Shown here: positions 17,185 through 62,821 of the stretch, piece after piece
How positions within the stretch are numbered: position 1 is the stretch's first letter
Layout: each line of letters starts with the position of its first letter
IMG/VR virus record: IMGVR_UViG_3300037725_000018
Span: 62,001 to 126,000 of that record
Direction: 5' to 3' (one strand)
Length of the DNA: 64,000 nt
Notes under the pieces: model-generated
What the model was told of the DNA's origin: nothing
Seen by the model: the letters and a program-made list of their open reading frames with translations, nothing else
Databases searched by the model: none
Program-made: the position numbers and the translations under genes

Positions 17185-17210
17185 ATTTGAAGCAGAAACA
17201 CTTTTGGTTG

Positions 17211-17250
17211 TGGACCCGGTAGGACTTGAACCTACGACCTTCGTGTTATG
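17211..17250 (-). pseudogene. 3' half of a split resident tRNA(CAT), probably Ile2
   Basis: CATAA-CACGA-AGGTC-GTAGG-TTCAAGT-CCTAC-CGGGTCC-A; truncated at the anticodon. Confidence 0.85.
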
Positions 17251-17297
17251 TAACTTTTCATAGGTCCAATGATATATATTAAAAAAGGGATAACATA

Positions 17298-27263: not shown

Positions 27264-27419
27264 ATGTTTCCGTGAGACCTGTTTAACTAAAAACCCTTGC
27301 ACTCCCACAGGTCATGGGGGGACCAATTCGCCACGTTCGGTGACATAGCCGTATTCTTATCGACGGAAAGCGAAGATTTCGGCGTCGGGATTATCACGTG
27401 TCTACCAATAATATATAGC

Positions 27420-27557
27420 AGATTGCCAATTTTAACGCCTTATTTGGCGAATGCGTTTAAGTGTTTTCTTCACCTTTAAAAGAACTTTCAATCAAGTCCT
27501 TCTTGGAATCGAACCAAGGTATCCGTATATTTAAGGATAAATTGCTGTAGGCAATCT
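27420..27557 (-). ncRNA. ACAGCA-motif RNA 1 (Y-RNA-like, degenerate permuted tRNA domain)
   Basis: Stem AGATTGCC/GGCAATCT, TACAGCAA, T-arm CTTGG-TTCGATT-CCAAG followed by a closed acceptor-like hairpin. Confidence 0.7.
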
Positions 27558-27559
27558 TG

Positions 27560-27633
27560 CGATCCCTCCCGGATTCGAACCGGGGACCTCTTCCGTGACA
27601 GGGAAGCATCCTAAACCACTAGACCAAGGGACC
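27560..27633 (-). tRNA. tRNA-Asp(GTC)
   Basis: Cloverleaf, loop CTGTCAC. Confidence 0.92.
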
Positions 27634-27881
27634 GTTTCATTCTTCAATCGCTTCCATCCAAACGGACGGTTCGTTTACCGTAAACCGAACAACGGTTCCG
27701 TCTTCAAATTTTAATCGAACGATATTTCCAGAATTTGCAAACCGCTTTGTAATCGTTGTTGATTCAACGGTTTTTCCTTCCATCCAATCGGCAATTTCTT
27801 CTTGGTAGTTTGAAACCATCTTCTGTATATTTGTTAACAAAAGCGCAAAGAATTAGTTCCTACTTTATAGAACTTTAAAAC

Positions 27882-27943
27882 AAACTGCTTTTTCTTTTTT
27901 TTGATATATGTAATCAAAGAGAAAAGTTGCTGTTAGCAGCTTT
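27882..27943 (-). ncRNA. ACAGCA-motif RNA 2 (minimal, no tRNA domain)
   Basis: Stem AAGCTGC/GCAGTTT, TAACAGCAA, then a simple AT-rich hairpin. Confidence 0.6.
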
Positions 27944-27944
27944 G

Positions 27945-28018
27945 TGTGGGTGGTGGGGATCGAACCCACAGCCTCCTGCTTGGAAGGCAGGCTATCTAGC
28001 CAATTGATATACACCCAC
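27945..28018 (-). tRNA. tRNA-Gly(TCC)
   Basis: Cloverleaf, loop CTTCCAA. Confidence 0.9.
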
Positions 28019-28023
28019 AAAAC

Positions 28024-28139
28024 AGGCTACACAAGAAAAGTGTGCTACCATTACACCATACGGGTTAAACCCGCACTTGGATTCGAACCAAGACCTTCTG
28101 CTTATAGGCAGATAAAAGTATGTCTGCTGCAGGTAGCCC
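28024..28139 (-). ncRNA. ACAGCA-motif RNA 3 (circularly permuted tRNA-like domain)
   Basis: Stem GGGCTAC/GTAGCCT, CTGCAGCAG, anticodon-like hairpin, T-arm, acceptor TGCGGG/CCCGTA closed by TTTAA, D-arm GTGTAATGGTAGCAC. Confidence 0.8.
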
Positions 28140-28200
28140 TATGTTTATCGTACGTCTATATATAGACTTTAGAAGCACTTGGTTCCGTAAGTCTATATAT

Positions 28201-28467
28201 TCACTTGTTCTTAACTTGGACTACAACTTCGTCCGAGTTTGAAACATATGCGTAAATTGCATATCCTAAATTACCGAGACCGAATGTGAACCACACAGTT
28301 AGTATGAACCAGATGAAATGAACAAACCCGGACCCGTAACTGTTCTTTCTAACCCTAACGTGTTTATCACTTTGTTCGGATACGGAATAGCCTTGGATTT
28401 GGTAATCGTCTACTTTGTTGTGAAGTTCTTCTTCGGTAGAGACTTTTCTAATTCTAACGTTTGGCAT
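28201..28467 (-). CDS. Small membrane protein
   Basis: HFIWFILTVWFTFGLGNLGYAIY TM hairpin; own promoter. Confidence 0.65.
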   Translation of the reverse strand: MPNVRIRKVSTEEELHNKVDDYQIQGYSVSEQSDKHVRVRKNSYGSGFVHFIWFILTVWFTFGLGNLGYAIYAYVSNSDEVVVQVKNK

Positions 28468-28548
28468 AACTGTATTTTAGTTTATAAATGATAGGAAGTT
28501 AAAATTTAGATGAATATATTTGTTCATCTGTTACTTTTATGCTATTCG

Positions 28549-28621
28549 GGTGAGTATCCGGATTTGAACCGGAACTAAGGCGACCACAACGCCTCGTGCT
28601 ACCAATTACACCATACCCACC
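28549..28621 (-). tRNA. tRNA-His(GTG)
   Basis: Cloverleaf, G-1:C73, loop TTGTGGT. Confidence 0.92.
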
Positions 28622-28679
28622 ATGTTTGGCGATTGTTTCACGCCAAACCGTCGCACGCAACCACGTGAACGGAAATATG

Positions 28680-28753
28680 TAACACGGGTGGGACTCGAAC
28701 CCACTAAAGACAGCTTGAAAGACTGCCTACGCGACCGCTTTGTATTCCGTGTC
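28680..28753 (-). tRNA. tRNA-Glu(TTC)
   Basis: Cloverleaf, loop CTTTCAA, atypical A8A9 and D-arm. Confidence 0.82.
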
Positions 28754-28761
28754 AAATATTG

Positions 28762-28834
28762 CACGGGTACTAGGACTTGCACCTAGATCCCCGGTTTTGG
28801 AGACCGGGATGTTTCTAAATTCCACCATACCCGT
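28762..28834 (-). tRNA. tRNA-Trp(CCA)
   Basis: Cloverleaf, loop CTCCAAA, T-loop TGCAAGT. Confidence 0.85.
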
Positions 28835-28849
28835 GTACCAATTCTAATT

Positions 28850-29155
28850 CTAATAGTCTTCGAAGCGGTCGTGAACCTTAATCGGATCATCGGAAGGAAA
28901 CCGCTTGTCGCTGGAATAAATGAAGTTTCCACCGAACATCGGTCCCCGCTTTCCATCCGGAGTTTCAACCGGAACTGCGTACGTGACCGTTTTACCGAAC
29001 ACGGTCTTTTCGGCAATCCGAACGGCAGGGGAATCTTCGGAAGGCTCAAACGGCCCTTCGGCGTTTACGATTACAACCGAGTCAACACGGCTCGTAACAC
29101 CGCCGTTGGTCGTGTCCGCTCCGTTTCGAGAATAAACGTTTGCGCGAATACCCAT
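28850..29155 (-). CDS. Conserved phage hypothetical protein
   Basis: TNGGVT, MFGGNFIYSSD.RF and I.VHDRFE motifs; preceded by a GGAAC promoter. Confidence 0.75.
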   Translation of the reverse strand: MGIRANVYSRNGADTTNGGVTSRVDSVVIVNAEGPFEPSEDSPAVRIAEKTVFGKTVTYAVPVETPDGKRGPMFGGNFIYSSDKRFPSDDPIKVHDRFEDY

Positions 29156-29262
29156 AGCTTCAAGTGTCTTTGATTGGGGTTTCCTTTCTTAACTTCACTA
29201 TATTCAATGCAACGCAAAGGAATTGGTTCCGAAAGAAACGGCACTTCACAAAAGCTTCATAC

Positions 29263-29541
29263 TTACTCTGTGCTATCGGAAACTTCGTCAAACGCTTCAT
29301 CTAAACTCTGCTCTTCCGGAGAGGCAAAACCTTTTTCGTCGCCACTGCTTCTTACGTCCCGTTCAACGCGCCAAATGTCGTTTACAGGGTACTTATACAC
29401 TTTTCCGTTTAGGTCCTCGATGCAGTAAAAACTTCCTTTCTCGTACGTGTTAACCGCTCCGTGATAGACCTTTTGAAAAGAAGACTTCAATTGAACTTTT
29501 ACTGTATGTGTATCTTGTTTTTCGTAACTATGCTGACTCAT
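29263..29541 (-). CDS. Hypothetical protein
   Basis: NTYEKGSFYCI and KYPV..IWRV motifs. Confidence 0.6.
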   Translation of the reverse strand: MSQHSYEKQDTHTVKVQLKSSFQKVYHGAVNTYEKGSFYCIEDLNGKVYKYPVNDIWRVERDVRSSGDEKGFASPEEQSLDEAFDEVSDSTE

Positions 29542-29568
29542 ATTGGCTTTTTACTACGGGTGAATGTG

Positions 29569-29641
29569 TGGAGCCAGTCGGATTCGAACCGACAACTTGA
29601 ACCGTGCAAAAGTTCCGCTCTACCGTTAGAGCTATGGCCCC
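29569..29641 (-). tRNA. tRNA-Ala(TGC)
   Basis: G3:U70, loop TTTGCAC. Confidence 0.92.
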
Positions 29642-29708
29642 ATAAGTCAAGGGTGACTCTACCAAAGTCCATTTAATCGGCAACTTACCGACCCTTGAAA
29701 AATAAAAC

Positions 29709-29829
29709 AGACTGCAATTGATTTAGTGCTCTGCCAGTTGAGCTACCCGTCCAAAAGCGGACGGGGTAGGACTCGAACCTACAACCTCTCCTTCCATGTA
29801 GGATATCAATGGATTGCTGTATGCAGCCT
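29709..29829 (-). ncRNA. ACAGCA-motif RNA 4 (circularly permuted tRNA-like domain)
   Basis: Stem AGGCTGCA/TGCAGTCT, TACAGCAA, T-arm GTAGG-TTCGAGT-CCTAC, acceptor CCCGTCC/GGACGGG closed by GCTTTT, then TA-GCTC-AACTGGCA-GAGC D-arm. Confidence 0.85.
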
Positions 29830-33286: not shown

Positions 33287-33574
33287 CGATTTTTTTCGTT
33301 TGGCGGCTCAACAAATTTAAATGGCGCTAGACGCCAGCATAATTCATTGTCCACATACTGTACAAATCATGAAAATTAATGAACAAACAATCACAAGATA
33401 CTCTTTACGGAAGTAAATCACTCTTCCGGTTGAGCCGCCAAACGAAAAAAACCGATCAAGATTCCCTCTGGTTGGTGGCTCAACATATGCCATAGCATGA
33501 ACACCAATTCACAATACTAATAAATTTACGGAAGTAAATCACTCTTCCGGTTGAGCCACCAACCGGAGGGAACC
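33287..33574 (-). ncRNA. Two tandem long-stem RNAs (33287-33454 and 33460-33574) with an identical 33-nt core
   Basis: Terminal inverted repeats of about 25 bp; shared TTTACGGAAGTAAATCACTCTTCCGGTTGAGCC at 33404-33436 and 33525-33557. Confidence 0.7.
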
Positions 33575-33633
33575 TATTCCCTCCTTTTTACTCACTTGGG
33601 TTTAACTTACGTCGTGCCCAAGTGTTTCAAAGA

Positions 33634-35166: not shown

Positions 35167-35288
35167 GTGTTTGCGGGATTCGAACCCGCGATTCCTTTTC
35201 AGGCTGGTTTCCCGGCACCGCTTTGTTTTGCTATACCGAACACCGTCATGTCCGGTTTGCCTTCTACGTAGAAAACAACTTTCACATT

Positions 35289-35702: not shown

Positions 35703-35856
35703 GAGAATGTTGCATCCACCACCTTAGCGGGATTCGAACCCGCGACTACCGCAATCTAGCGCGGCACTCTGACCTACCTGAGTTATAAGGTGTCACCAAC
35801 GGCGGTGGGATTCGAACCCACAGATACCGATCAAGCACCGTTACAGCAACATTCTC
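35703..35856 (-). ncRNA. Double tRNA-like RNA enclosed in an 11-bp stem
   Basis: GAGAATGTTGC/GCAACATTCTC encloses an anticodon-less mini-tRNA and a cloverleaf (35719-35792) with a 6-nt loop. Confidence 0.7.
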
Positions 35857-36480: not shown

Positions 36481-36651
36481 TTGACAAGCGGTGTGCTTTT
36501 ACGCCAAATCGCGAGAGTATTAATCACAGGACGCCTTACCAGTTACGGGGTGCGCTCTCACTTCGTTGACAGCCATCTATTTTCACATACGCGGTCAACG
36601 GCGAACTCTTTAAAGGATGGATGCTTCTAATCCCACCTTCCGCTTTGTCAA
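36481..36651 (-). ncRNA. 23S rRNA H43/H44 (L11-binding domain) mimic RNA
   Basis: GGTGGGA-TTAGAAGCA-TCCATCC-TTTAAAGAGT...GCGTAAAAGC-ACAC closed by TTGACAA..GCGG/CCGC-TTGTCAA. Confidence 0.75.
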
Positions 36652-37009
36652 CAGTTTCAAAAGAACAACGCTTCTTTCTTATTTCCAATATGCTTTACTG
36701 CGTTTTATCAAGTTTGATCCGTAGTTTTTATGAAGAAACTGTTAATTATTATCAACTCAAGGCCATATTTAGTTCATTCGAATAAGGAACGCTTGGCGAA
36801 TCTTTAGGTCCCGGTACCGCTTCTTATACTGCTCTCGAAGAACGGGGTTCGGCTCACTTTTGAAACTCTCTTTCGTTTCTTCAATGGCTTCACCAAGCTC
36901 GCCAGCCTTGTTGTAGAGGTCTTTGGTAGCTTTGCTTTTGCCAATGATGTTCATAATCAAGCTTTTTTGTGTGAAAGGATCTCTCTCTTTATCCACAGGC
37001 TTTAATGCG

Positions 37010-38853: not shown

Positions 38854-39104
38854 TTTTTCGAGTTCTTAAAAATTCGTTTCCAAACGTCTTCAATAAGCGG
38901 GGAAAGGTCTTCATTTTCTAAAACCGAAGTTACGTGACTAATAACCTCTCTTTCCCGGCACTTATCTTCAGTTTCAACACCGTTTTCTTCTTTGATTCTT
39001 TGTATTTCGTCTACAATAAGCTGGCGTTGATCTAGAAGCTTGACAATTCGTTGGTCTACATCGTCAATCTTTTCTCTGTGCTCTTCAATTCGGTTTTTAC
39101 TCAT
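38850..39104 (-). CDS. Chorismate mutase type II (AroQ)
   Basis: REKIDDVDQRIVKLLDQR..IQRIK..D..REREV. Confidence 0.85.
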   Translation of the reverse strand: MSKNRIEEHREKIDDVDQRIVKLLDQRQLIVDEIQRIKEENGVETEDKCREREVISHVTSVLENEDLSPLIEDVWKRIFKNSKK

Positions 39105-39619
39105 ATTTGGCTATTTGACTTTTTAATGAGAACTTTATCTTTTGTGTCATATCTGTACGTTAGGGAGAAAGGCAAAATGGAAAATGTTCCTTGAAAATCA
39201 AGTTCATCGACGTATTTTTCGCCTCTTCCTTTTTTTAGGTACGCAATTGTAACGTGTGGATCATAGTCAAACCGGATTTCGTTTTTTCTTTGCTTACAAA
39301 AGCTATGCTCTTCTTTAAGGCGACCGGACTTAACGTTGAACTTTAAAACATCAAACCAAGGGTTTTCAAAAAGCCCAACCCCGGTAATTTTTAAATTTGG
39401 AAATTCAAACTTGTTTTCATTTTCAACGATCCAGTCTTTTTCATCATTTATCCAACCGTAAAAGACGGTACAATGTGGAAAAAGCTCGTATCCGTATGTG
39501 TCTGCTTTTCCGTATACGTCTTTTTCATCGACGGTTTGAAGAATCGAAAGCCAACCGTCCCACTTCAAATCATACATTAAACAGCCTTTTGGAGACCGAC
39601 GTTTTTCTTTGGTTTTCAT
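39101..39619 (-). CDS. 2H phosphoesterase (Acb1/T4 gp57B-like or 2'-5' RNA ligase-like)
   Basis: Two HxT motifs: PHCTVFYG and PHVTIAY. Confidence 0.8.
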   Translation of the reverse strand: MKTKEKRRSPKGCLMYDLKWDGWLSILQTVDEKDVYGKADTYGYELFPHCTVFYGWINDEKDWIVENENKFEFPNLKITGVGLFENPWFDVLKFNVKSGRLKEEHSFCKQRKNEIRFDYDPHVTIAYLKKGRGEKYVDELDFQGTFSILPFSLTYRYDTKDKVLIKKSNSQI

Positions 39620-39629
39620 GTTTTTATCT

Positions 39630-40289
39630 TTACTTTTGAACAGTTCGTTTAACCCTTTGATCTTTAGGCTTTTCAAGAAGATAAAAGGTTCCCTTCTCTC
39701 GAATAAAGTGCTTAGAGTGAAGTTCCATATTCACCCGGACAAAATCTTGACCTTCAACCTCTTCTTTCTCTGCCACTTCATCAACGGTTTCGCCGTGCGG
39801 TTTAAAATAGAAGATTTGAAATTCTTCGTTGGAAAGCTCTTCCTCGTCGTAAATGATTTGCGTTAGGTCGTCCATGTTGCTAATGTTGTACTTTTCGTCT
39901 ACGGCGTCGTATTGATCTCTAACCCGCTCTTGAAGATCATCAATCCAACTGCCAAGGTTGTTGATCTCTTTTACTTCTACCGGGTCTTGATCGGCAAACA
40001 CAAAAGAGCCAAAACAGGAAAAATCTGTTCCGTCCGGGTTCCCGTCTTCATCTACGGTGAGGTGCTCTTTCTCGGAAAGGCTAAAGACGTAAGCTTTTCC
40101 CTTGTCTTTATTTCTTTCTGCAAAATCTTCAATGTCTTCAACAATGTAGTTACGCGGAAGGTAATATTCATCACCTATCTTCACATAGTTTTGATCTTGG
40201 ACAACTTCAATGTCCATGTTCATCCCAAGATCGATAAGCATATCTTCATCTAAAGGATTTTGCTGCTGTTTTTCAATAAGCTCAAACAT
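39630..40289 (-). CDS. Hypothetical acidic protein
   Basis: 219-aa ORF. Confidence 0.6.
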   Translation of the reverse strand: MFELIEKQQQNPLDEDMLIDLGMNMDIEVVQDQNYVKIGDEYYLPRNYIVEDIEDFAERNKDKGKAYVFSLSEKEHLTVDEDGNPDGTDFSCFGSFVFADQDPVEVKEINNLGSWIDDLQERVRDQYDAVDEKYNISNMDDLTQIIYDEEELSNEEFQIFYFKPHGETVDEVAEKEEVEGQDFVRVNMELHSKHFIREKGTFYLLEKPKDQRVKRTVQK

Positions 40290-40336: not shown

Positions 40337-41812
40337 TTACACGCGAACCATGTCGTAACGATCATCCATGATCGTATTCAACGTAATTTGAATCGGGGTA
40401 ATGTTTTGGCCGGAAAGAATGTTCTTCATAATTGACGGGCTAAATCCGCTCACAAGAGCAGCTCCGCTTTCGGAAAACCGAACCGGATTATTCCCGCTAT
40501 CATCTAGGTTCCAAAACACAATGTTTGGGGCTTCGTATCCAGCTTTTTCGTACTTCTCCCGGACCATGTTCATCGCAGACACCGAACGCCCATCAATATT
40601 GTATGAATCAAACTGCATGTCGGACATAACAAGAATTGTTTCCGGCATTTGGTTTTCGGGTACGTTTCTGCTTTTTGCAAAGGAAAGCAAGCTTTCAAAC
40701 ATCGCAGAAATGTTTGTATTCATTCCCCAAGAAATTTCGTTTAGGCTTTCTACCCGATCTCGGAGATTTGAGCCTCCGATTTCAACGAAACTTGGGTTTT
40801 CGCTAAACGTCACAACCCGGTTTTGAAATGGTCCGGTGTTGTGCTCTGCCGTGTAAAGTCCAAGCCCGATAGCAACGTCAATCGGCCTTGTGGACGAGTT
40901 AGAGTTATAGGAAGCAGTCATGCTTCCGGACACGTCAACAACGGATAGAACATTATCTTCCATCCACACAGGAAGGTTCTTCCACTGCCCTTCAAGTTGC
41001 TTTAGCTCTTTGTCTCCGATAGAAGAGCCGCTTCCAAAAGCATTTCGGGATTGAAGAATGGGCTTGACAATTTCATGTGGAAAAATCGCCCCCGCACTCA
41101 TTTTTGTGTCTGTAGATTCGTCAAGCACGTCGTCTAGGTAAGCTTCAAAACGATCTTCGTCGTTTCGAACAAATGCATTCCGATACTTCCGGATTGCTTG
41201 AGATGGAACAGACTCGTAATCAATGCTATCCCAATTTTCTTCGCACATGTCCTGTTCAACTACGTCACGAAGACCGGACACAAGCTTTCTGTACCGCTTA
41301 GAGCGGTTTCCTACACTTCCACTATCAAACATGTGGTCACGGAGATCCGTAAACATGTCGTGGTCGGACTTGCCTTCAGACGGTGCCCACTTCGCCGCAA
41401 GACTGTCTCCGGACTCCAAGGCTTTTTCATAAAAATTCAAAGCGTCTTCATACACTTCGGTTCCCTTCGTTGAGTGAAGAACATCGTCCCAACGCCCGTA
41501 TTCGGGAATTAGATCAAGGTTTTTTCGGGCCGTTTCTGGATCGTTCTCTGCAAGCCACCGGAACATAATCCGAAACGTTCGCCGCTCTCCTTGTCCCCCG
41601 CGAATGTCGCGGTTATAGAAAAGTGACCGAAGAGCACCTTCCTTCGTTTCTTGATACGCCTTTCGAAAAAGGTCTTCGATGTATTCCGGGTCTTTTGAGC
41701 GAGACGCGCCCATAGAGAAGAAAAGATCCACAAGGTCTTTGCCGCTTGTGGAATGGGTCTTCATCCCATTTTCGGTCGTCTCGTCGTAAATTCCGGTTAG
41801 AATCTTGTTCAT
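40337..41812 (-). CDS. DUF2828-family helical plus vWA protein (Ro60/TROVE-like architecture)
   Basis: TTENGM, RDIRGGQGER, YGRWDD, AKWAP, MIDAS DVSGSM, WGMNTN, SDMQFD, VFWNL, VSGFSP. Confidence 0.9.
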   Translation of the reverse strand: MNKILTGIYDETTENGMKTHSTSGKDLVDLFFSMGASRSKDPEYIEDLFRKAYQETKEGALRSLFYNRDIRGGQGERRTFRIMFRWLAENDPETARKNLDLIPEYGRWDDVLHSTKGTEVYEDALNFYEKALESGDSLAAKWAPSEGKSDHDMFTDLRDHMFDSGSVGNRSKRYRKLVSGLRDVVEQDMCEENWDSIDYESVPSQAIRKYRNAFVRNDEDRFEAYLDDVLDESTDTKMSAGAIFPHEIVKPILQSRNAFGSGSSIGDKELKQLEGQWKNLPVWMEDNVLSVVDVSGSMTASYNSNSSTRPIDVAIGLGLYTAEHNTGPFQNRVVTFSENPSFVEIGGSNLRDRVESLNEISWGMNTNISAMFESLLSFAKSRNVPENQMPETILVMSDMQFDSYNIDGRSVSAMNMVREKYEKAGYEAPNIVFWNLDDSGNNPVRFSESGAALVSGFSPSIMKNILSGQNITPIQITLNTIMDDRYDMVRV

Positions 41813-41917
41813 GGCGATAATTTATAACTTTAGTTTCGTTAATAGTAAAAAGCTTCTTCTCTTTCTCTAACCTCTAAAACAAAAAAACGAAGGGATGGTT
41901 CCAAGTTCAAACACTCT

Positions 41918-45147: not shown

Positions 45148-45817
45148 TTTCGTTTCTATTCTTCTTGTGTGTGCTTTGAGCAACCAAATTCGCTCCCGTC
45201 TTCTCCTGCTGGAGGGTTGAACGGGTACTTCAGACCTCCAAACTCTTGCGAAAGTTCTTTGTTCCCGCAAAGAGGAACGCCTTCTTGAACTTCAAAGAAA
45301 ACGCATGTTTCGCATGTATCGTTCATAGCAAACTCACCTTTTGACTTTTGATTCATTGATTAGCTATTCTTCATCCCAATACTTTTCCGTGAACTCTTTG
45401 AACTCTTCTTTGTCCTCTTCCCAATCCCCGCTCCAGTTTGGAAATACTTTTTGAAAGCCAATGTATCCTAAACGGGAACGAAGCTTTTCGTACTCTACTT
45501 CAAGAGTTTTTTCTTCATCGACCGGAACCAAACTTGAATGTGAAATAAGTCTTTCCACAGACCCGGCAGAAGACTTCGTTCTTCCGGTTTCAACGTTTTG
45601 CAAGATGTATCGCTTCAAAGTTATTGTTTCCCCGGCTTTTGATCCACGTCTTGCCTCTTTCTTCGTTTCTTGAACGTGAACTTCATATACTCTTTCTCCG
45701 TCTGTAAACCTATCTCCAACCTCGATCATAACAGTTTTTTGTTTTATGTTCGTCAATTATAAACGGTCTGAATTGTACCATTGTTTTTCATGTAACCGAA
45801 AAGTTAACGATGAAAAA

Positions 45818-45860
45818 GGTAGCCCCGGTGGGGATCGAACCCACACTGAACAGTTTTTAA
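45818..45860 (-). pseudogene. 3' half of a split resident tRNA-Leu(TAA)
   Basis: T-TAA-AA-ACTGT-TCAGT-GTGGG-TTCGATC-CCCAC-CGGGGCT-ACC. Confidence 0.85.
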
Positions 45861-50809: not shown

Positions 50810-50896
50810 CGGAGAGCGGAGGCATCGAACCTCAAGATTTTTCAATCTCCATCTGATTTCGAATCAGCGATAGGTGCCAAACCTACGTCACTCTCC
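50810..50896 (-). tRNA. tRNA-Ser(CGA), atypical
   Basis: Loop TTCGAAA, long variable arm, extended D-stem. Confidence 0.75.
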
Positions 50897-50900
50897 ACAG

Positions 50901-53234: not shown

Positions 53235-53795
53235 TCAAGAGTGGTGGTTTTTTTCAAATGGATTGTCTACCGGGCTTGATTTTTCACATGTGGTTAGGAC
53301 CTCTTCTAAACTTACAGGTCGGTAGTTCCAAGAGTCAACGCCAACATCAATTCTATTTTTTCCCGTAAGCTTGTGTCCGGTGTGTTCATGCCCGTGCAAA
53401 TGAATGGCGCTATAGTGCCGTTTGTTCCACATTTCAATCGGGTAGTGAAAAAGAACAATCGTTTTCGGGTGCTTCGAATTTTCTTGAGGAATCGTTAGCT
53501 CTTTGTAGTTTTGAAAAGATGCAAACTCGCTACGAACGCTTGAAGTCGGTCGGTCATGATTGCCCGTAACCAGATGAACATTTCCATTCAAAACGTCGAG
53601 AAGGCTTCGAACGCGATTTGAATCTCCAAAGGTTAGGTCGCCCAAGTGATAAATATCATCGCCGCTTGAAACCTCTCTATTCCAGTTTTCAATTAAAGTG
53701 GAGTTCATCTGCGAAACCGATTTGAAAGGTCTTTCCGCATAATTGATGATATTTCGGTGATCAAAATGGGTATCACTTGTGAAGTACGTAGCCAT
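53235..53795 (-). CDS. Calcineurin-like metallophosphoesterase
   Basis: FTSDTHFDH, HLGD, GNHD, FHYP, HLHGH.H, DVGVD. Confidence 0.92.
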   Translation of the reverse strand: MATYFTSDTHFDHRNIINYAERPFKSVSQMNSTLIENWNREVSSGDDIYHLGDLTFGDSNRVRSLLDVLNGNVHLVTGNHDRPTSSVRSEFASFQNYKELTIPQENSKHPKTIVLFHYPIEMWNKRHYSAIHLHGHEHTGHKLTGKNRIDVGVDSWNYRPVSLEEVLTTCEKSSPVDNPFEKNHHS

Positions 53796-57588: not shown

Positions 57589-57891
57589 ATGTGTGATTTA
57601 TGTCCAATTTTTTGCCTTTTTGTGTGCCTTTGTAATAAACATTTTTCGGGAACGTATCGAGCAATCTTCATAAACATACCGTTCAAGCCGACGATGTTGA
57701 CTGGCAAACTCTTCAACGTATGCTTTAAAGTCTTCCCGGCTTTTAGCACGGTTGGCTTTTGCCGCTTGAACCGCAACCATGTTTATTAGCTCTTCTCGGT
57801 CTGTCATTTTTTTTCGTGTGTTTCTCTTTGTTAACTCACTCTATAAAACCGCAATCTCGACATGTTGTTCCAAAATCAAATGTGAAGAAAT

Positions 57892-62252: not shown

Positions 62253-62821
62253 AAAAGGACGTTGGCGTTTGTGATTGGTTGCTTTCTTTTAAATCCAATC
62301 TTTCAAACAAGCCTTTTTTAAAACAGTTCCGATTTCAAATGTGAAGCTTCTGTTTAGAAACTTAGGTTCGTTTAATCTTCATCATCTTCATTGTCGTCAT
62401 TTTGGGAGCGGCTTTTGTCATTTGCCATAGCCCGAAGCTTTTTTGAATCTTGCCTGCTCTTCCAATACTTCTTTTGACTTTCTTCAGAAGCGGTGCCTTT
62501 GAGCTTTTGCTTCATTTGATCGGTCTTCCCTTCTTTTTCTGCCTGCTCTTTTTTTTCTTTGAACTTATCAAAAAAATCTGACATTATACTACGTTACATG
62601 TTTTTAGATGTTATTTTATCAATTTAAAAGTAAATTTTCTCTCTGTATGCGGCTTCTAATAGCATATACTCGTTGAGAATATGTATACTTTACTTTGTCA
62701 TTTATATATTTTGAATTAATTGTGAAGAAGAATATACTTCTTTCTCTAAGACTTAATATTTCAAGGTCTGGGAACTCGCTGGATTCATTTTCAGTTAGTA
62801 TAACAATAGCCATCGCTGTTA

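What the first reader, a model, noticed from the sequence alone, without database searches (positions are those of the whole stretch)
40337..41812. DUF2828/vWA protein as the likely Ro60-like partner of the ACAGCA RNAs
Seen: a 491-aa helical domain plus MIDAS vWA domain with its own GGAAC promoter, in the same RNA-rich region as the Y-like RNAs and two RNA ligases. Known: Ro60/Rsr is a TROVE plus vWA ring that binds Y RNA and is often linked to RNA repair genes; I know of no established RNA ligand for DUF2828. Inference: DUF2828, the ACAGCA RNAs and the ligases form an undescribed phage ribonucleoprotein system for tRNA repair, decay or decoying.
Basis: partly seen in the sequence, partly recalled or inferred. 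Interest (0 to 1): 0.8.

Follow-up and report, generated by a model that had tools for sequence, protein, structure and literature searches.

The report
Phage Ro60-like protein with its RNAs
This phage gene encodes a divergent relative of the RNA-binding ring protein Ro60, and across hundreds of unrelated phages the same gene family sits next to small structured RNAs that all carry a CAGCAA loop, which points to a widespread second kind of Ro/Y-RNA particle not described in the papers or Rfam release I could search.

Summary
The ORF is real: 40337-41812, minus strand, 491 aa, Pfam DUF2828 plus DUF7788/vWA, with an invariant MIDAS motif. Its AlphaFold model (pLDDT 88.7) matches only Ro60/TROVE structures over its full length in the PDB, although no sequence method links it to TROVE.

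The "ACAGCA RNAs" are also real. Four copies lie in the tRNA array at 27415-29828, minus strand. Each has a 6-7 bp covarying basal stem, then 3 nt and an invariant CAGCAA (CAGCAG in one copy) in a 5'-side internal loop. The interior is either a small hairpin or a permuted tRNA-like module resembling YrlA.

The gene and the RNA are linked across phages:
- In 79 viral loci, 92 such hairpins lie within 500 nt of the gene on its strand, against 4 on the other strand.
- 80 bacterial and archaeal genome loci replicate this (93 against 5).
- A covariance model gives 105 of 105 hits on the gene strand.
- Searching by the RNA pattern finds the gene in 20 of 118 loci, against 1 of 119 for a scrambled core.

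The RNAs are unannotated in the Felixounavirus, Listeria, Staphylococcus, Campylobacter, Bacillus and Mycobacterium phage records I checked.

The protein's Ro-likeness was already known from annotation and one preprint. I found no description of the RNA partner class. Binding is inferred, not shown. The RNA ligases are not conserved neighbours.

The parts
40337..41812 (-). Gene for the 491-aa Ro60-like protein (DUF2828 plus DUF7788/vWA)
   Evidence: ORF; Pfam and PHROG matches; AF2 model with pLDDT 88.7 and pTM 0.86; Foldseek top hits all Ro60/TROVE.
40964..41812 (-). N-terminal all-helical domain (residues about 1-283), the TROVE/HEAT-ring equivalent
   Evidence: Helices H26-H278 in the model. 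Full-length alignment to Ro60 gives TM 0.54-0.62 normalised to the query, whereas vWA-only hits give 0.2-0.26. No Pfam TROVE match.
40340..40954 (-). C-terminal vWA domain with a complete MIDAS motif (D293-x-S295-x-S297, T366, D398)
   Evidence: DUF7788 E 1.2e-52 and VWA_2; these residues are invariant in 49 homologues.
29704..29828 (-). Y-like RNA a, long form: basal stem GGCUGC/GCAGUC, loop with ACAGCAA, second helix, then an anticodon-like hairpin, T arm, closed acceptor stem and D arm, ending in a UGUUUU tail
   Evidence: Rfam YrlA 40.5 bits over the full-length model; model R1 100.9 bits (a training sequence of R1); the MFE fold reproduces this architecture.
28019..28138 (-). Y-like RNA b, long form with the core variant CAGCAG; it abuts the 5' end of tRNA-Gly (28018-27944)
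   Evidence: R1 51.3 bits, E 5e-10, not a training sequence; sequence and descriptor.
27877..27941 (-). Y-like RNA c, short form (basal stem, ACAGCAA loop, one hairpin); it starts 2 nt after tRNA-Gly
   Evidence: R2 42.2 bits, E 2e-8 (a training sequence of R2); fold; descriptor.
27415..27556 (-). Y-like RNA d: basal stem GAUUGCC/GGCAAUC, ACAGCAA loop, T arm, but no recognisable D arm; it starts 2 nt after tRNA-Asp
   Evidence: R1 31.3 bits; fold z-score -3.4; descriptor.
41898..41910 (-). TTGAACTTGGAAC motif about 90 nt upstream of the ATG, a possible phage promoter element (untested)
   Evidence: Sequence; TTGA-N3-8-GGAAC occurs 15 times against 6.5 expected.

Best explanation
The ORF encodes a highly diverged member of the Ro60 superfamily: a helical ring domain plus a MIDAS vWA domain, sequence family DUF2828/DUF7788. 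Its ligands are most likely the phage-encoded small RNAs that carry a CAGCAA motif. The motif sits in an asymmetric internal loop, 3 nt above a 6-7 bp terminal stem formed by the RNA's 5' and 3' ends. This is the position where canonical Y RNAs carry the Ro-binding GGUCCGA or GNCGAA motif.

The RNAs come in two forms. The short form is about 50-65 nt with a stem, the loop and one hairpin, like YrlB. The long form is about 115-140 nt, and its interior is a circularly permuted tRNA-like module, like YrlA.

In this phage the four RNAs are embedded in the tRNA array with spacers of 0-2 nt. They are therefore probably co-transcribed with the tRNAs and released by tRNA-processing enzymes.

By analogy with Rsr-YrlA-PNPase and with phiRo60-Yrl-PNPase of Thermus phage phiLo, the particle probably uses the RNA to gate the protein ring and to tether it to a host RNA-handling enzyme. 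That would redirect or blunt host RNA decay or defence during infection.

Shown here: the fold, the RNA family and its covariation, and the gene-RNA linkage. Inferred: binding, processing, and the effector or host target.
For: Fold:
- The 8 best PDB matches are all Ro60 or phiRo60.
- BFVD links the DUF2828 relatives to TROVE proteins and to 'Ro-like RNA binding protein' of Gordonia phage VanLee.
- In the ESM Atlas, the nearest clusters outside the family are TROVE plus vWA_Ro60.

RNA family:
- All six basal-stem pairs show compensatory changes, with 94.7% of cells paired against 35-45% when the partner is slid.
- CAGCAA is the top-ranked of all 4096 six-mers at that position next to the gene (89 occurrences in 56 loci).
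- Folds put the motif in a single-stranded 5'-side loop.

Linkage:
- 92 hairpins lie within 500 nt on the gene strand in 57 of 79 viral loci, against 4 on the other strand.
- In 80 genome loci the figures are 93 against 5.
- Model R2 gives 105 of 105 hits on the gene strand, in 59 of 79 loci.
- The RNA pattern finds the gene in 20 of 118 loci, against 1 of 119 for a scrambled core, p 4.5e-6.
- 25 loci have the RNA beside the gene without any tRNA in the locus.
- Copies lie directly beside the gene in E. coli phage allfine, Listeria AG20, Mycobacterium Clautastrophe, Campylobacter NCTC12673 and Staphylococcus S-CoN_Ph8. In Bacillus Chewbecca they lie in the adjoining tRNA array, the nearest about 480 nt upstream.

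Literature:
- Canonical Ro60 genes have Y RNAs within 4 kb on the same strand (PMC4201824).
- phiRo60 binds phage Yrl RNAs and host PNPase (PMC12135203).
- Bas63 gp130, described as structurally similar to Ro60 and lying upstream of a tRNA stretch, counters the Ppl defence system (PMC11482910).
Against: - No binding or expression data exist. No RNA-seq run holding this sequence was listed.
- In this window the RNAs are 10.5-13 kb from the gene, unlike most loci.
- 20-22 of 79 viral loci show no copy near the gene (22 lack one within 500 nt by the descriptor; 20 have no R2 hit in the locus).
- Vibrio phage phi-ST2 has only a 44-nt mini-hairpin, which overlaps the gene's own start.
- No sequence-level similarity to TROVE or to any solved Ro60 was found.
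Confidence: 0.75

Rival explanations
1. The CAGCAA hairpins are cis-acting operators in the untranslated regions of the DUF2828 mRNA. The protein binds them to autoregulate its own synthesis, and they are not stable trans-acting Y RNAs.
For: Most copies lie within 500 nt of the gene on the same strand, both upstream (40) and downstream (52). In Vibrio phage phi-ST2, the 3' strand of a mini-hairpin covers the gene's ribosome-binding site and ATG.
Against: In this window, and in other loci such as L059 and L052, the copies lie kilobases away inside tRNA arrays. They occur in tandem arrays of 2-5 copies with different stems. The long forms carry an elaborate tRNA-like module that an operator would not need. 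This rival still requires the protein to bind the motif.
Confidence: 0.1
2. The hairpins are processing or punctuation signals of phage tRNA operons, read by a host RNase or another phage factor. They lie near DUF2828 only because that gene tends to sit beside tRNA clusters.
For: 42 of 79 loci have tRNAs, 468 of 469 of them on the gene strand. In the window and in phage allfine the RNAs alternate with tRNAs at spacers of 0-15 nt.
Against: 25 loci have a gene-adjacent hairpin but no tRNA in the locus. With the same T-arm anchor, a scrambled core finds DUF2828 in 1 of 119 loci, against 20 of 118 for CAGCAA. The hairpins cluster at the gene itself rather than spreading evenly through the tRNA arrays.
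Confidence: 0.08
3. The protein is a vWA/MIDAS protein-protein adaptor or a virion component. Its likeness to Ro60 is fold-level only and carries no RNA-binding role.
For: No sequence similarity to TROVE. One record annotates a homologue as 'putative structural protein' (Erwinia phage pEa_SNUABM_12).
Against: The whole two-domain architecture matches Ro60, not just the vWA domain. A conserved structured RNA is tightly linked to the gene. The gene sits in early or tRNA regions, not in virion modules.
Confidence: 0.05

Closest known systems
Bacterial Rsr (Ro60) with YrlA/YrlB or Yrn1 Y RNAs (Salmonella, Deinococcus, Mycobacterium smegmatis; also TROVE-type Ro of cluster C mycobacteriophages)
   Same: A ring-plus-vWA protein. 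The small RNAs are encoded on the same strand near the gene. Each RNA has a terminal stem made of its 5' and 3' ends, with a conserved motif in the 5' strand just above it. A long RNA with a T arm, closed acceptor and D arm tRNA mimic occurs together with a shorter RNA that lacks it (PMC4201824).
   Different: The protein belongs to Pfam DUF2828/DUF7788, not TROVE, and no HMM-level similarity was found. The RNA motif is CAGCAA instead of GNCGAAN0-1G. The long forms reach only 34-40 bits against Rfam YrlA (gathering score 69), and the short forms match no Rfam family.
phiRo60 with Yrl1/Yrl2 of Thermus phage phiLo (PDB 9KOP, 9L5Y)
   Same: A phage-encoded Ro60-like ring with phage-encoded Y-like RNAs upstream of the gene. 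It is of similar size (463 aa) and is a structural match (E 1.8e-7). It shows that such particles can bind host PNPase and damp it (PMC12135203).
   Different: The phiLo RNAs were found by, and carry, the canonical CGAA motif. phiRo60 shows no detectable sequence similarity to this protein.
Bas63 (Felixounavirus) gp130
   Same: Described as structurally similar to Ro60 and lying directly upstream of the tRNA stretch. This matches the layout of the DUF2828 gene of the Felixounavirus allfine, where I find four CAGCAA RNAs among those tRNAs.
   Different: The preprint reports a phenotype (gp130 counters the Ppl defence system) and only guesses that some annotated tRNAs might be Y RNAs. It defines no RNA, motif or family. 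I did not align Bas63 gp130 itself.

Membership tests
Pfam DUF2828 + DUF7788 | Matches to both profile HMMs above the gathering score | tested here: met
   143 bits (cut-off 29) and 178.8 bits (cut-off 27.1).
Ro60/TROVE (Pfam PF05731 + PF25045) | Sequence match to the TROVE domain model or to solved Ro60 proteins | tested here: not met
   No TROVE hit at E <= 0.01. phmmer and a 49-sequence profile found no Ro60 in the PDB at E <= 10.
Ro60/TROVE (Pfam PF05731 + PF25045) | Helical-repeat ring domain followed by a vWA domain (the Ro60 fold) | tested here: met
   The Foldseek top 8 are all Ro60 or phiRo60, E 5e-9 to 2e-7, TM 0.54-0.62 (normalised to the query), 516-572 aligned columns. A BFVD TROVE protein matches at E 1e-9. 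Ring closure itself was not measured.
Ro60/TROVE (Pfam PF05731 + PF25045) | MIDAS motif in the vWA domain | tested here: met
   D293, S295, S297, T366 and D398 are invariant in 49 sequences.
Ro60/TROVE (Pfam PF05731 + PF25045) | Y-type RNA encoded close to the gene on the same strand | tested here: met
   Met in the family: 57 of 79 and 51 of 80 loci within 500 nt. In this window the RNAs are on the same strand but 10.5-13 kb away.
Ro60/TROVE (Pfam PF05731 + PF25045) | Demonstrated binding of Y RNA and of misfolded RNA ends in the cavity | not testable with these tools
   Needs biochemistry.
Rfam YrlA (RF02553) | Score at or above the gathering threshold (69 bits) | tested here: not met
   40.5 bits in the window; 39.3 and 34.1 bits in L201 and L077.
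Rfam YrlA (RF02553) | T arm, closed acceptor-like stem and D arm in permuted order, inside a terminal stem | tested here: met
   Met for copy a, by the alignment to the model and by the MFE fold. Copy b shows these elements in its sequence, though its MFE fold differs in part. Copy d lacks the D arm and copy c lacks the whole module.
Rfam YrlA (RF02553) | GNCGAAN0-1G motif near the 5' end (Chen et al. 2014) | tested here: not met
   CAGCAA (or CAGCAG) takes its place in all four window copies and throughout the family.

The most novel reading that the evidence does not exclude
DUF2828/DUF7788 proteins and CAGCAA RNAs form a second, sequence-distinct class of Ro/Y ribonucleoprotein with its own recognition code. 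It is carried by a large share of tRNA-bearing phages (711 GenBank phage records) and by relatives in bacterial genomes. The protein family also occurs in giant viruses and plants. In phages the particle acts as an RNA-guided counter-defence or RNA-decay-hijacking device, as hinted by Bas63 gp130 countering the Ppl system.
Probability: 0.55. Interest if true: 0.85.

Novelty: new variant of a known kind. Interest (0 to 1): 0.72.

Why it matters
Ro60 and Y RNAs are conserved from bacteria to humans, yet their function is still poorly understood. Phage versions have only just begun to be studied.

A distinct Ro-like family with its own easily recognised RNA partners gives a new and very large comparative data set on how a Ro ring reads its Y RNA: CAGCAA here, against CGAA or GGUCCGA in the known systems. 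The partners are present in well-studied and applied phages, including Felix O1-like, Listeria A511/P100-like, Staphylococcus, Campylobacter and cluster L mycobacteriophages.

It also supplies concrete RNA candidates for the reported anti-defence phenotype of Bas63 gp130. And it flags dozens of unannotated, or wrongly CDS-annotated, small RNA genes in public phage genomes.

Tried and rejected
- ACAGCA alone as a signal: not enriched.
- A first pattern with one N too many missed the three real sites.
- Megablast of the region against GenBank phages: no match.
- phmmer and a profile search against PDB sequences: no Ro60 hit.
- A first loose descriptor with spacers of 2-4 nt had a high background, 146 hits on the opposite strand. 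I replaced it with a fixed 3-nt spacer.
- The reverse test on the first 80 RNA-pattern loci was inconclusive because the loci are short pieces of long contigs. A scrambled-core control resolved it.
- Large ORFs next to CAGCAA RNAs in loci without DUF2828 were scanned for canonical TROVE: none found.
- Conserved protein neighbours (ligases, CYTH, exonuclease, 2H phosphoesterase): not conserved by tblastn.
- RNA-seq evidence: none was listed. The DNA runs are tidal-flat metagenomes, so I did not use read laying.
- A sub-threshold match to archaeal LSU rRNA at 36566-36667 did not reappear in a focused scan.
- The 100% pairing in alignment A5 follows from how the sequences were chosen and is not evidence. 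The covariation claim rests.

Full report
**Setting.** The window is part of IMG/VR contig IMGVR_UViG_3300037725_000018 (223 kb), recovered from tidal-flat metagenomes. Nearly all genes are on the minus strand. It holds 40 tRNA genes and a tmRNA, a CCA-adding enzyme, a SpoU methylase, several phosphoesterases and two PF09414 RNA ligases. No GenBank phage is close at the DNA level.

**The ORF.** 40337-41812 (minus strand) is an intact 491-aa ORF.
- Pfam finds DUF2828 (E 1.6e-41), DUF7788 (E 1.2e-52) and a weak VWA_2 hit, but no TROVE.
- PHROG 850, labelled 'RNA-binding protein', matches at 1.4e-128.
- The family is large: more than 5000 90%-identity clusters passed E 1e-5 among the candidates scored.
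- In an alignment of 49 members, D293, S295, S297, T366 and D398 are invariant, giving a complete MIDAS motif. Many arginines and lysines of the N-terminal domain are also invariant.

**Fold.**
- An AlphaFold2 model built on that alignment is confident: pLDDT 88.7, pTM 0.86. It has about 17 helices followed by an alpha/beta domain.
- Against the PDB, the eight best Foldseek matches are all Ro60: Xenopus 1YVR, 1YVP and 2I91, the 2026 Ro60/La/pre-5S rRNA cryo-EM entries 9NFA, 9NF8 and 9NEP, and the Thermus phage phiLo protein 9KOP. E-values run from 5e-9 to 2e-7 and TM from 0.54 to 0.62 (normalised to the query), over 516-572 columns.
- The next hits are vWA domains alone, at E above 1e-3 and TM near 0.2. 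The helical domain therefore contributes to the match.
- In BFVD the DUF2828 relatives, from phages and from giant viruses, are followed by a crAss-like TROVE protein (E 1e-9) and by a Gordonia phage 'Ro-like RNA binding protein'.
- In the ESM Atlas, once DUF2828 and DUF7788 clusters are excluded, the nearest clusters are TROVE plus vWA_Ro60 (score 0.93). One cluster has members that hit both TROVE and DUF2828 models.
- Sequence methods see nothing: phmmer and a profile search of PDB sequences find no Ro60.
- I conclude that this is a very divergent branch of the Ro60 superfamily. I could not measure the ring opening.

**The RNAs in the window.** ACAGCA alone is at chance level. An Rfam scan below threshold found a full-length YrlA match at 29699-29822 (40.5 bits; gathering score 69). 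Comparison with relatives, described below, defined the real unit. It is a 6-7 bp stem formed by the two ends of the RNA, then 3 nt, then CAGCAA in a 5'-side internal loop, then a variable interior, then the stem complement, usually followed by UG.

The window has exactly four credible copies, all on the minus strand:
- a, 29704-29828, long form.
- b, 28019-28138, long form with the core variant CAGCAG.
- c, 27877-27941, short form.
- d, 27415-27556, with a T arm but no D arm.

The minimum-energy fold of copy a gives the basal stem, the single-stranded CAGCAA loop, a second helix and a four-way junction. The junction carries an anticodon-like hairpin, a T arm, a closed acceptor stem and a D arm.

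Copy b ends where tRNA-Gly begins. Copy c starts 2 nt after that tRNA ends, and copy d starts 2 nt after tRNA-Asp. I infer co-transcription with the tRNAs and release by tRNA-processing enzymes.

**Linkage of gene and RNA.** I fetched 80 viral loci around homologues that are only 39-45% identical to this protein.
- A permuted-tRNA scan found long forms whose flanks all showed the same CAGCAA and a covarying terminal stem.
- A covariance model of the long form gave 177 of 178 hits on the gene strand, many of them short elements abutting the gene.
- On that model-based alignment the basal stem is 94.7% paired, and all six pairs show compensatory changes. Sliding the partner gives 35-45% pairing.
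- A strict descriptor (6-bp stem, 3 nt, CAGCAA, 20-150 nt, complement) finds 92 hits within 500 nt of the gene on its strand, in 57 of 79 loci. That zone is 5.7% of the sequence. The opposite strand has 4 such hits.
- With the core left free, CAGCAA is the top-ranked of all 4096 six-mers at that position, followed among non-low-complexity words by its own frame shifts.
- A short-form model (R2) gives 105 hits at E <= 0.01 in 59 of 79 loci, all on the gene strand.
- An independent set of 80 loci from bacterial and archaeal genome assemblies, including isolate genomes, replicates this: 93 hits near the gene on its strand in 51 loci, against 5 on the other strand.
- The link does not depend on tRNA clusters: 25 viral loci have the RNA beside the gene and no tRNA in the locus.
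- In the reverse direction, a collection scan for CAGCAA-N15-45-GGTTCGANTCC returned 118 loci, of which 20 encode DUF2828 within the roughly 9 kb held. The same pattern with the scrambled core AACGAC gave 1 of 119 (Fisher p 4.5e-6).

**Cultured phages.** The protein has homologues in 711 GenBank phage records. Some are annotated 'Ro-like RNA binding protein' (cluster L mycobacteriophages) or 'RNA-binding protein'. I found unannotated CAGCAA RNAs as follows:
- Escherichia phage allfine (Felixounavirus): four copies, alternating with tRNAs just downstream of the gene.
- Listeria phage AG20: three, just upstream.
- Mycobacterium phage Clautastrophe: three, in the unannotated gap just downstream.
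- Campylobacter phage NCTC12673: two, just upstream.
- Staphylococcus phage S-CoN_Ph8: three, just downstream, partly under a 29-codon 'hypothetical protein'.
- Bacillus phage Chewbecca: three, in the adjoining tRNA array.
- Vibrio phage phi-ST2: only a 44-nt mini-hairpin, whose 3' strand covers the gene's own ribosome-binding site and ATG.

In Rfam 15 only the long forms match anything (YrlA, below threshold). The short forms match no family.

**What is not supported.**
- Most window neighbours tested, including both ligases, the CYTH protein, the SbcD-like exonuclease and the CCA-adding enzyme, have no homologue within 10 kb of the gene in 86 other loci by tblastn. The exceptions are an HNH endonuclease (11 loci), a metallophosphoesterase (9 loci) and the 2H phosphoesterase (1 locus). 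RNA-repair genes such as RtcB do occur near the gene in some phages.
- The GGAAC element upstream of the gene exists, and a TTGA-N3-8-GGAAC motif is enriched. Nothing shows that it is a promoter.
- No RNA-seq run was listed for this sequence.

**Relation to what is known.**
- Canonical bacterial and phage Ro60 (TROVE) genes have YrlA-type RNAs within 4 kb on the same strand, with a GNCGAAN0-1G motif (PMC4201824).
- phiRo60 of Thermus phage phiLo binds two CGAA-type Yrl RNAs and host PNPase (PMC12135203).
- A 2024 preprint noted that Bas63 gp130 resembles Ro60 structurally, counters the Ppl defence system, and might use Y RNAs hidden among the neighbouring tRNAs (PMC11482910).
- I found no paper linking DUF2828 or DUF7788 to an RNA partner.

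The finding is therefore a new variant of a known kind: a Ro/Y particle with a different protein sequence family and a different RNA recognition motif.

**Verdict.** The core interpretation, that this is the Ro-like partner of the ACAGCA RNAs, is strongly supported by fold and by comparative genomics, but it has not been shown biochemically. The inclusion of the ligases and the proposed tRNA-repair role remain speculation.

Noticed in passing
L204:2933-2976 (Vibrio phage phi-ST2, KT919973): The only CAGCAA element near this phage's DUF2828 gene is a 44-nt mini-hairpin. Its 3' stem strand covers the gene's ribosome-binding site and ATG, which suggests translational autoregulation (R2 21 bits, E 0.013).
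   Followed up: partly
L203:4471-4560 (Staphylococcus phage S-CoN_Ph8, OR354831): A 29-codon 'hypothetical protein' CDS is annotated over the first of three tandem CAGCAA RNAs. It is probably a mis-annotation of an RNA gene.
   Followed up: partly
window 17206-17267, 35173-35199, 35805-35831, 45815-45847 (minus strand): T-arm-like GGTTCGANTCC hairpins lie outside any called tRNA and outside the CAGCAA RNAs. The first scores 22.6 bits as a partial tRNA. They may be tRNA fragments or further tRNA-like RNAs.
   Followed up: no
window 35719-35792 and 50810-50897 (minus strand): ARAGORN calls a tRNA with an odd two-base anticodon ('ag'), which Rfam scores at 50 bits as tRNA. A tRNA-Sec-like match lies just below threshold (40.6 bits; gathering score 47), directly 3' of (downstream in transcription from) tRNA-Cys.
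   Followed up: no
window 39101-39676 (minus strand): Two genes downstream of the Ro-like gene there is a weak 2H phosphoesterase / LigT-like protein. It also touches the anti-CBASS Acb1 model (E 0.0014), so it could be a cyclic-nucleotide or RNA-end phosphodiesterase.
   Followed up: no
window, minus strand, e.g. 62326-62338, 57867-57879, 53424-53437, 41898-41910: TTGA-N3-8-GGAAC occurs 15 times against 6.5 expected, mostly in intergenic positions on the coding strand. It may be a phage-specific promoter element of the ECF-like GGAAC type.
   Followed up: partly
window 33404-33456 and 33525-33577: Two 53-nt direct repeats, 87% identical and 121 nt apart, lie in a region without a convincing ORF near tRNA-Leu.
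   Followed up: no
window 36566-36667 (minus strand): A sub-threshold match to part of archaeal LSU rRNA (29.4 bits) appeared in the whole-window scan but not in a focused rescan. It is probably spurious.
   Followed up: yes
BFVD and ESM Atlas hits: DUF2828/DUF7788 proteins with the same fold occur in giant viruses (Pithovirus, CroV, Marseillevirus, mimivirids) and in plants. I did not examine whether those have RNA partners.
   Followed up: no
L200:6755-8062 (Listeria phage AG20): In this phage the Ro-like gene lies 1.2 kb upstream of an RtcB 'tRNA splicing ligase' and beside a metal-dependent phosphohydrolase. This recalls the bacterial rsr-yrlA-rtcBA operon, although the arrangement is not general.
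   Followed up: partly
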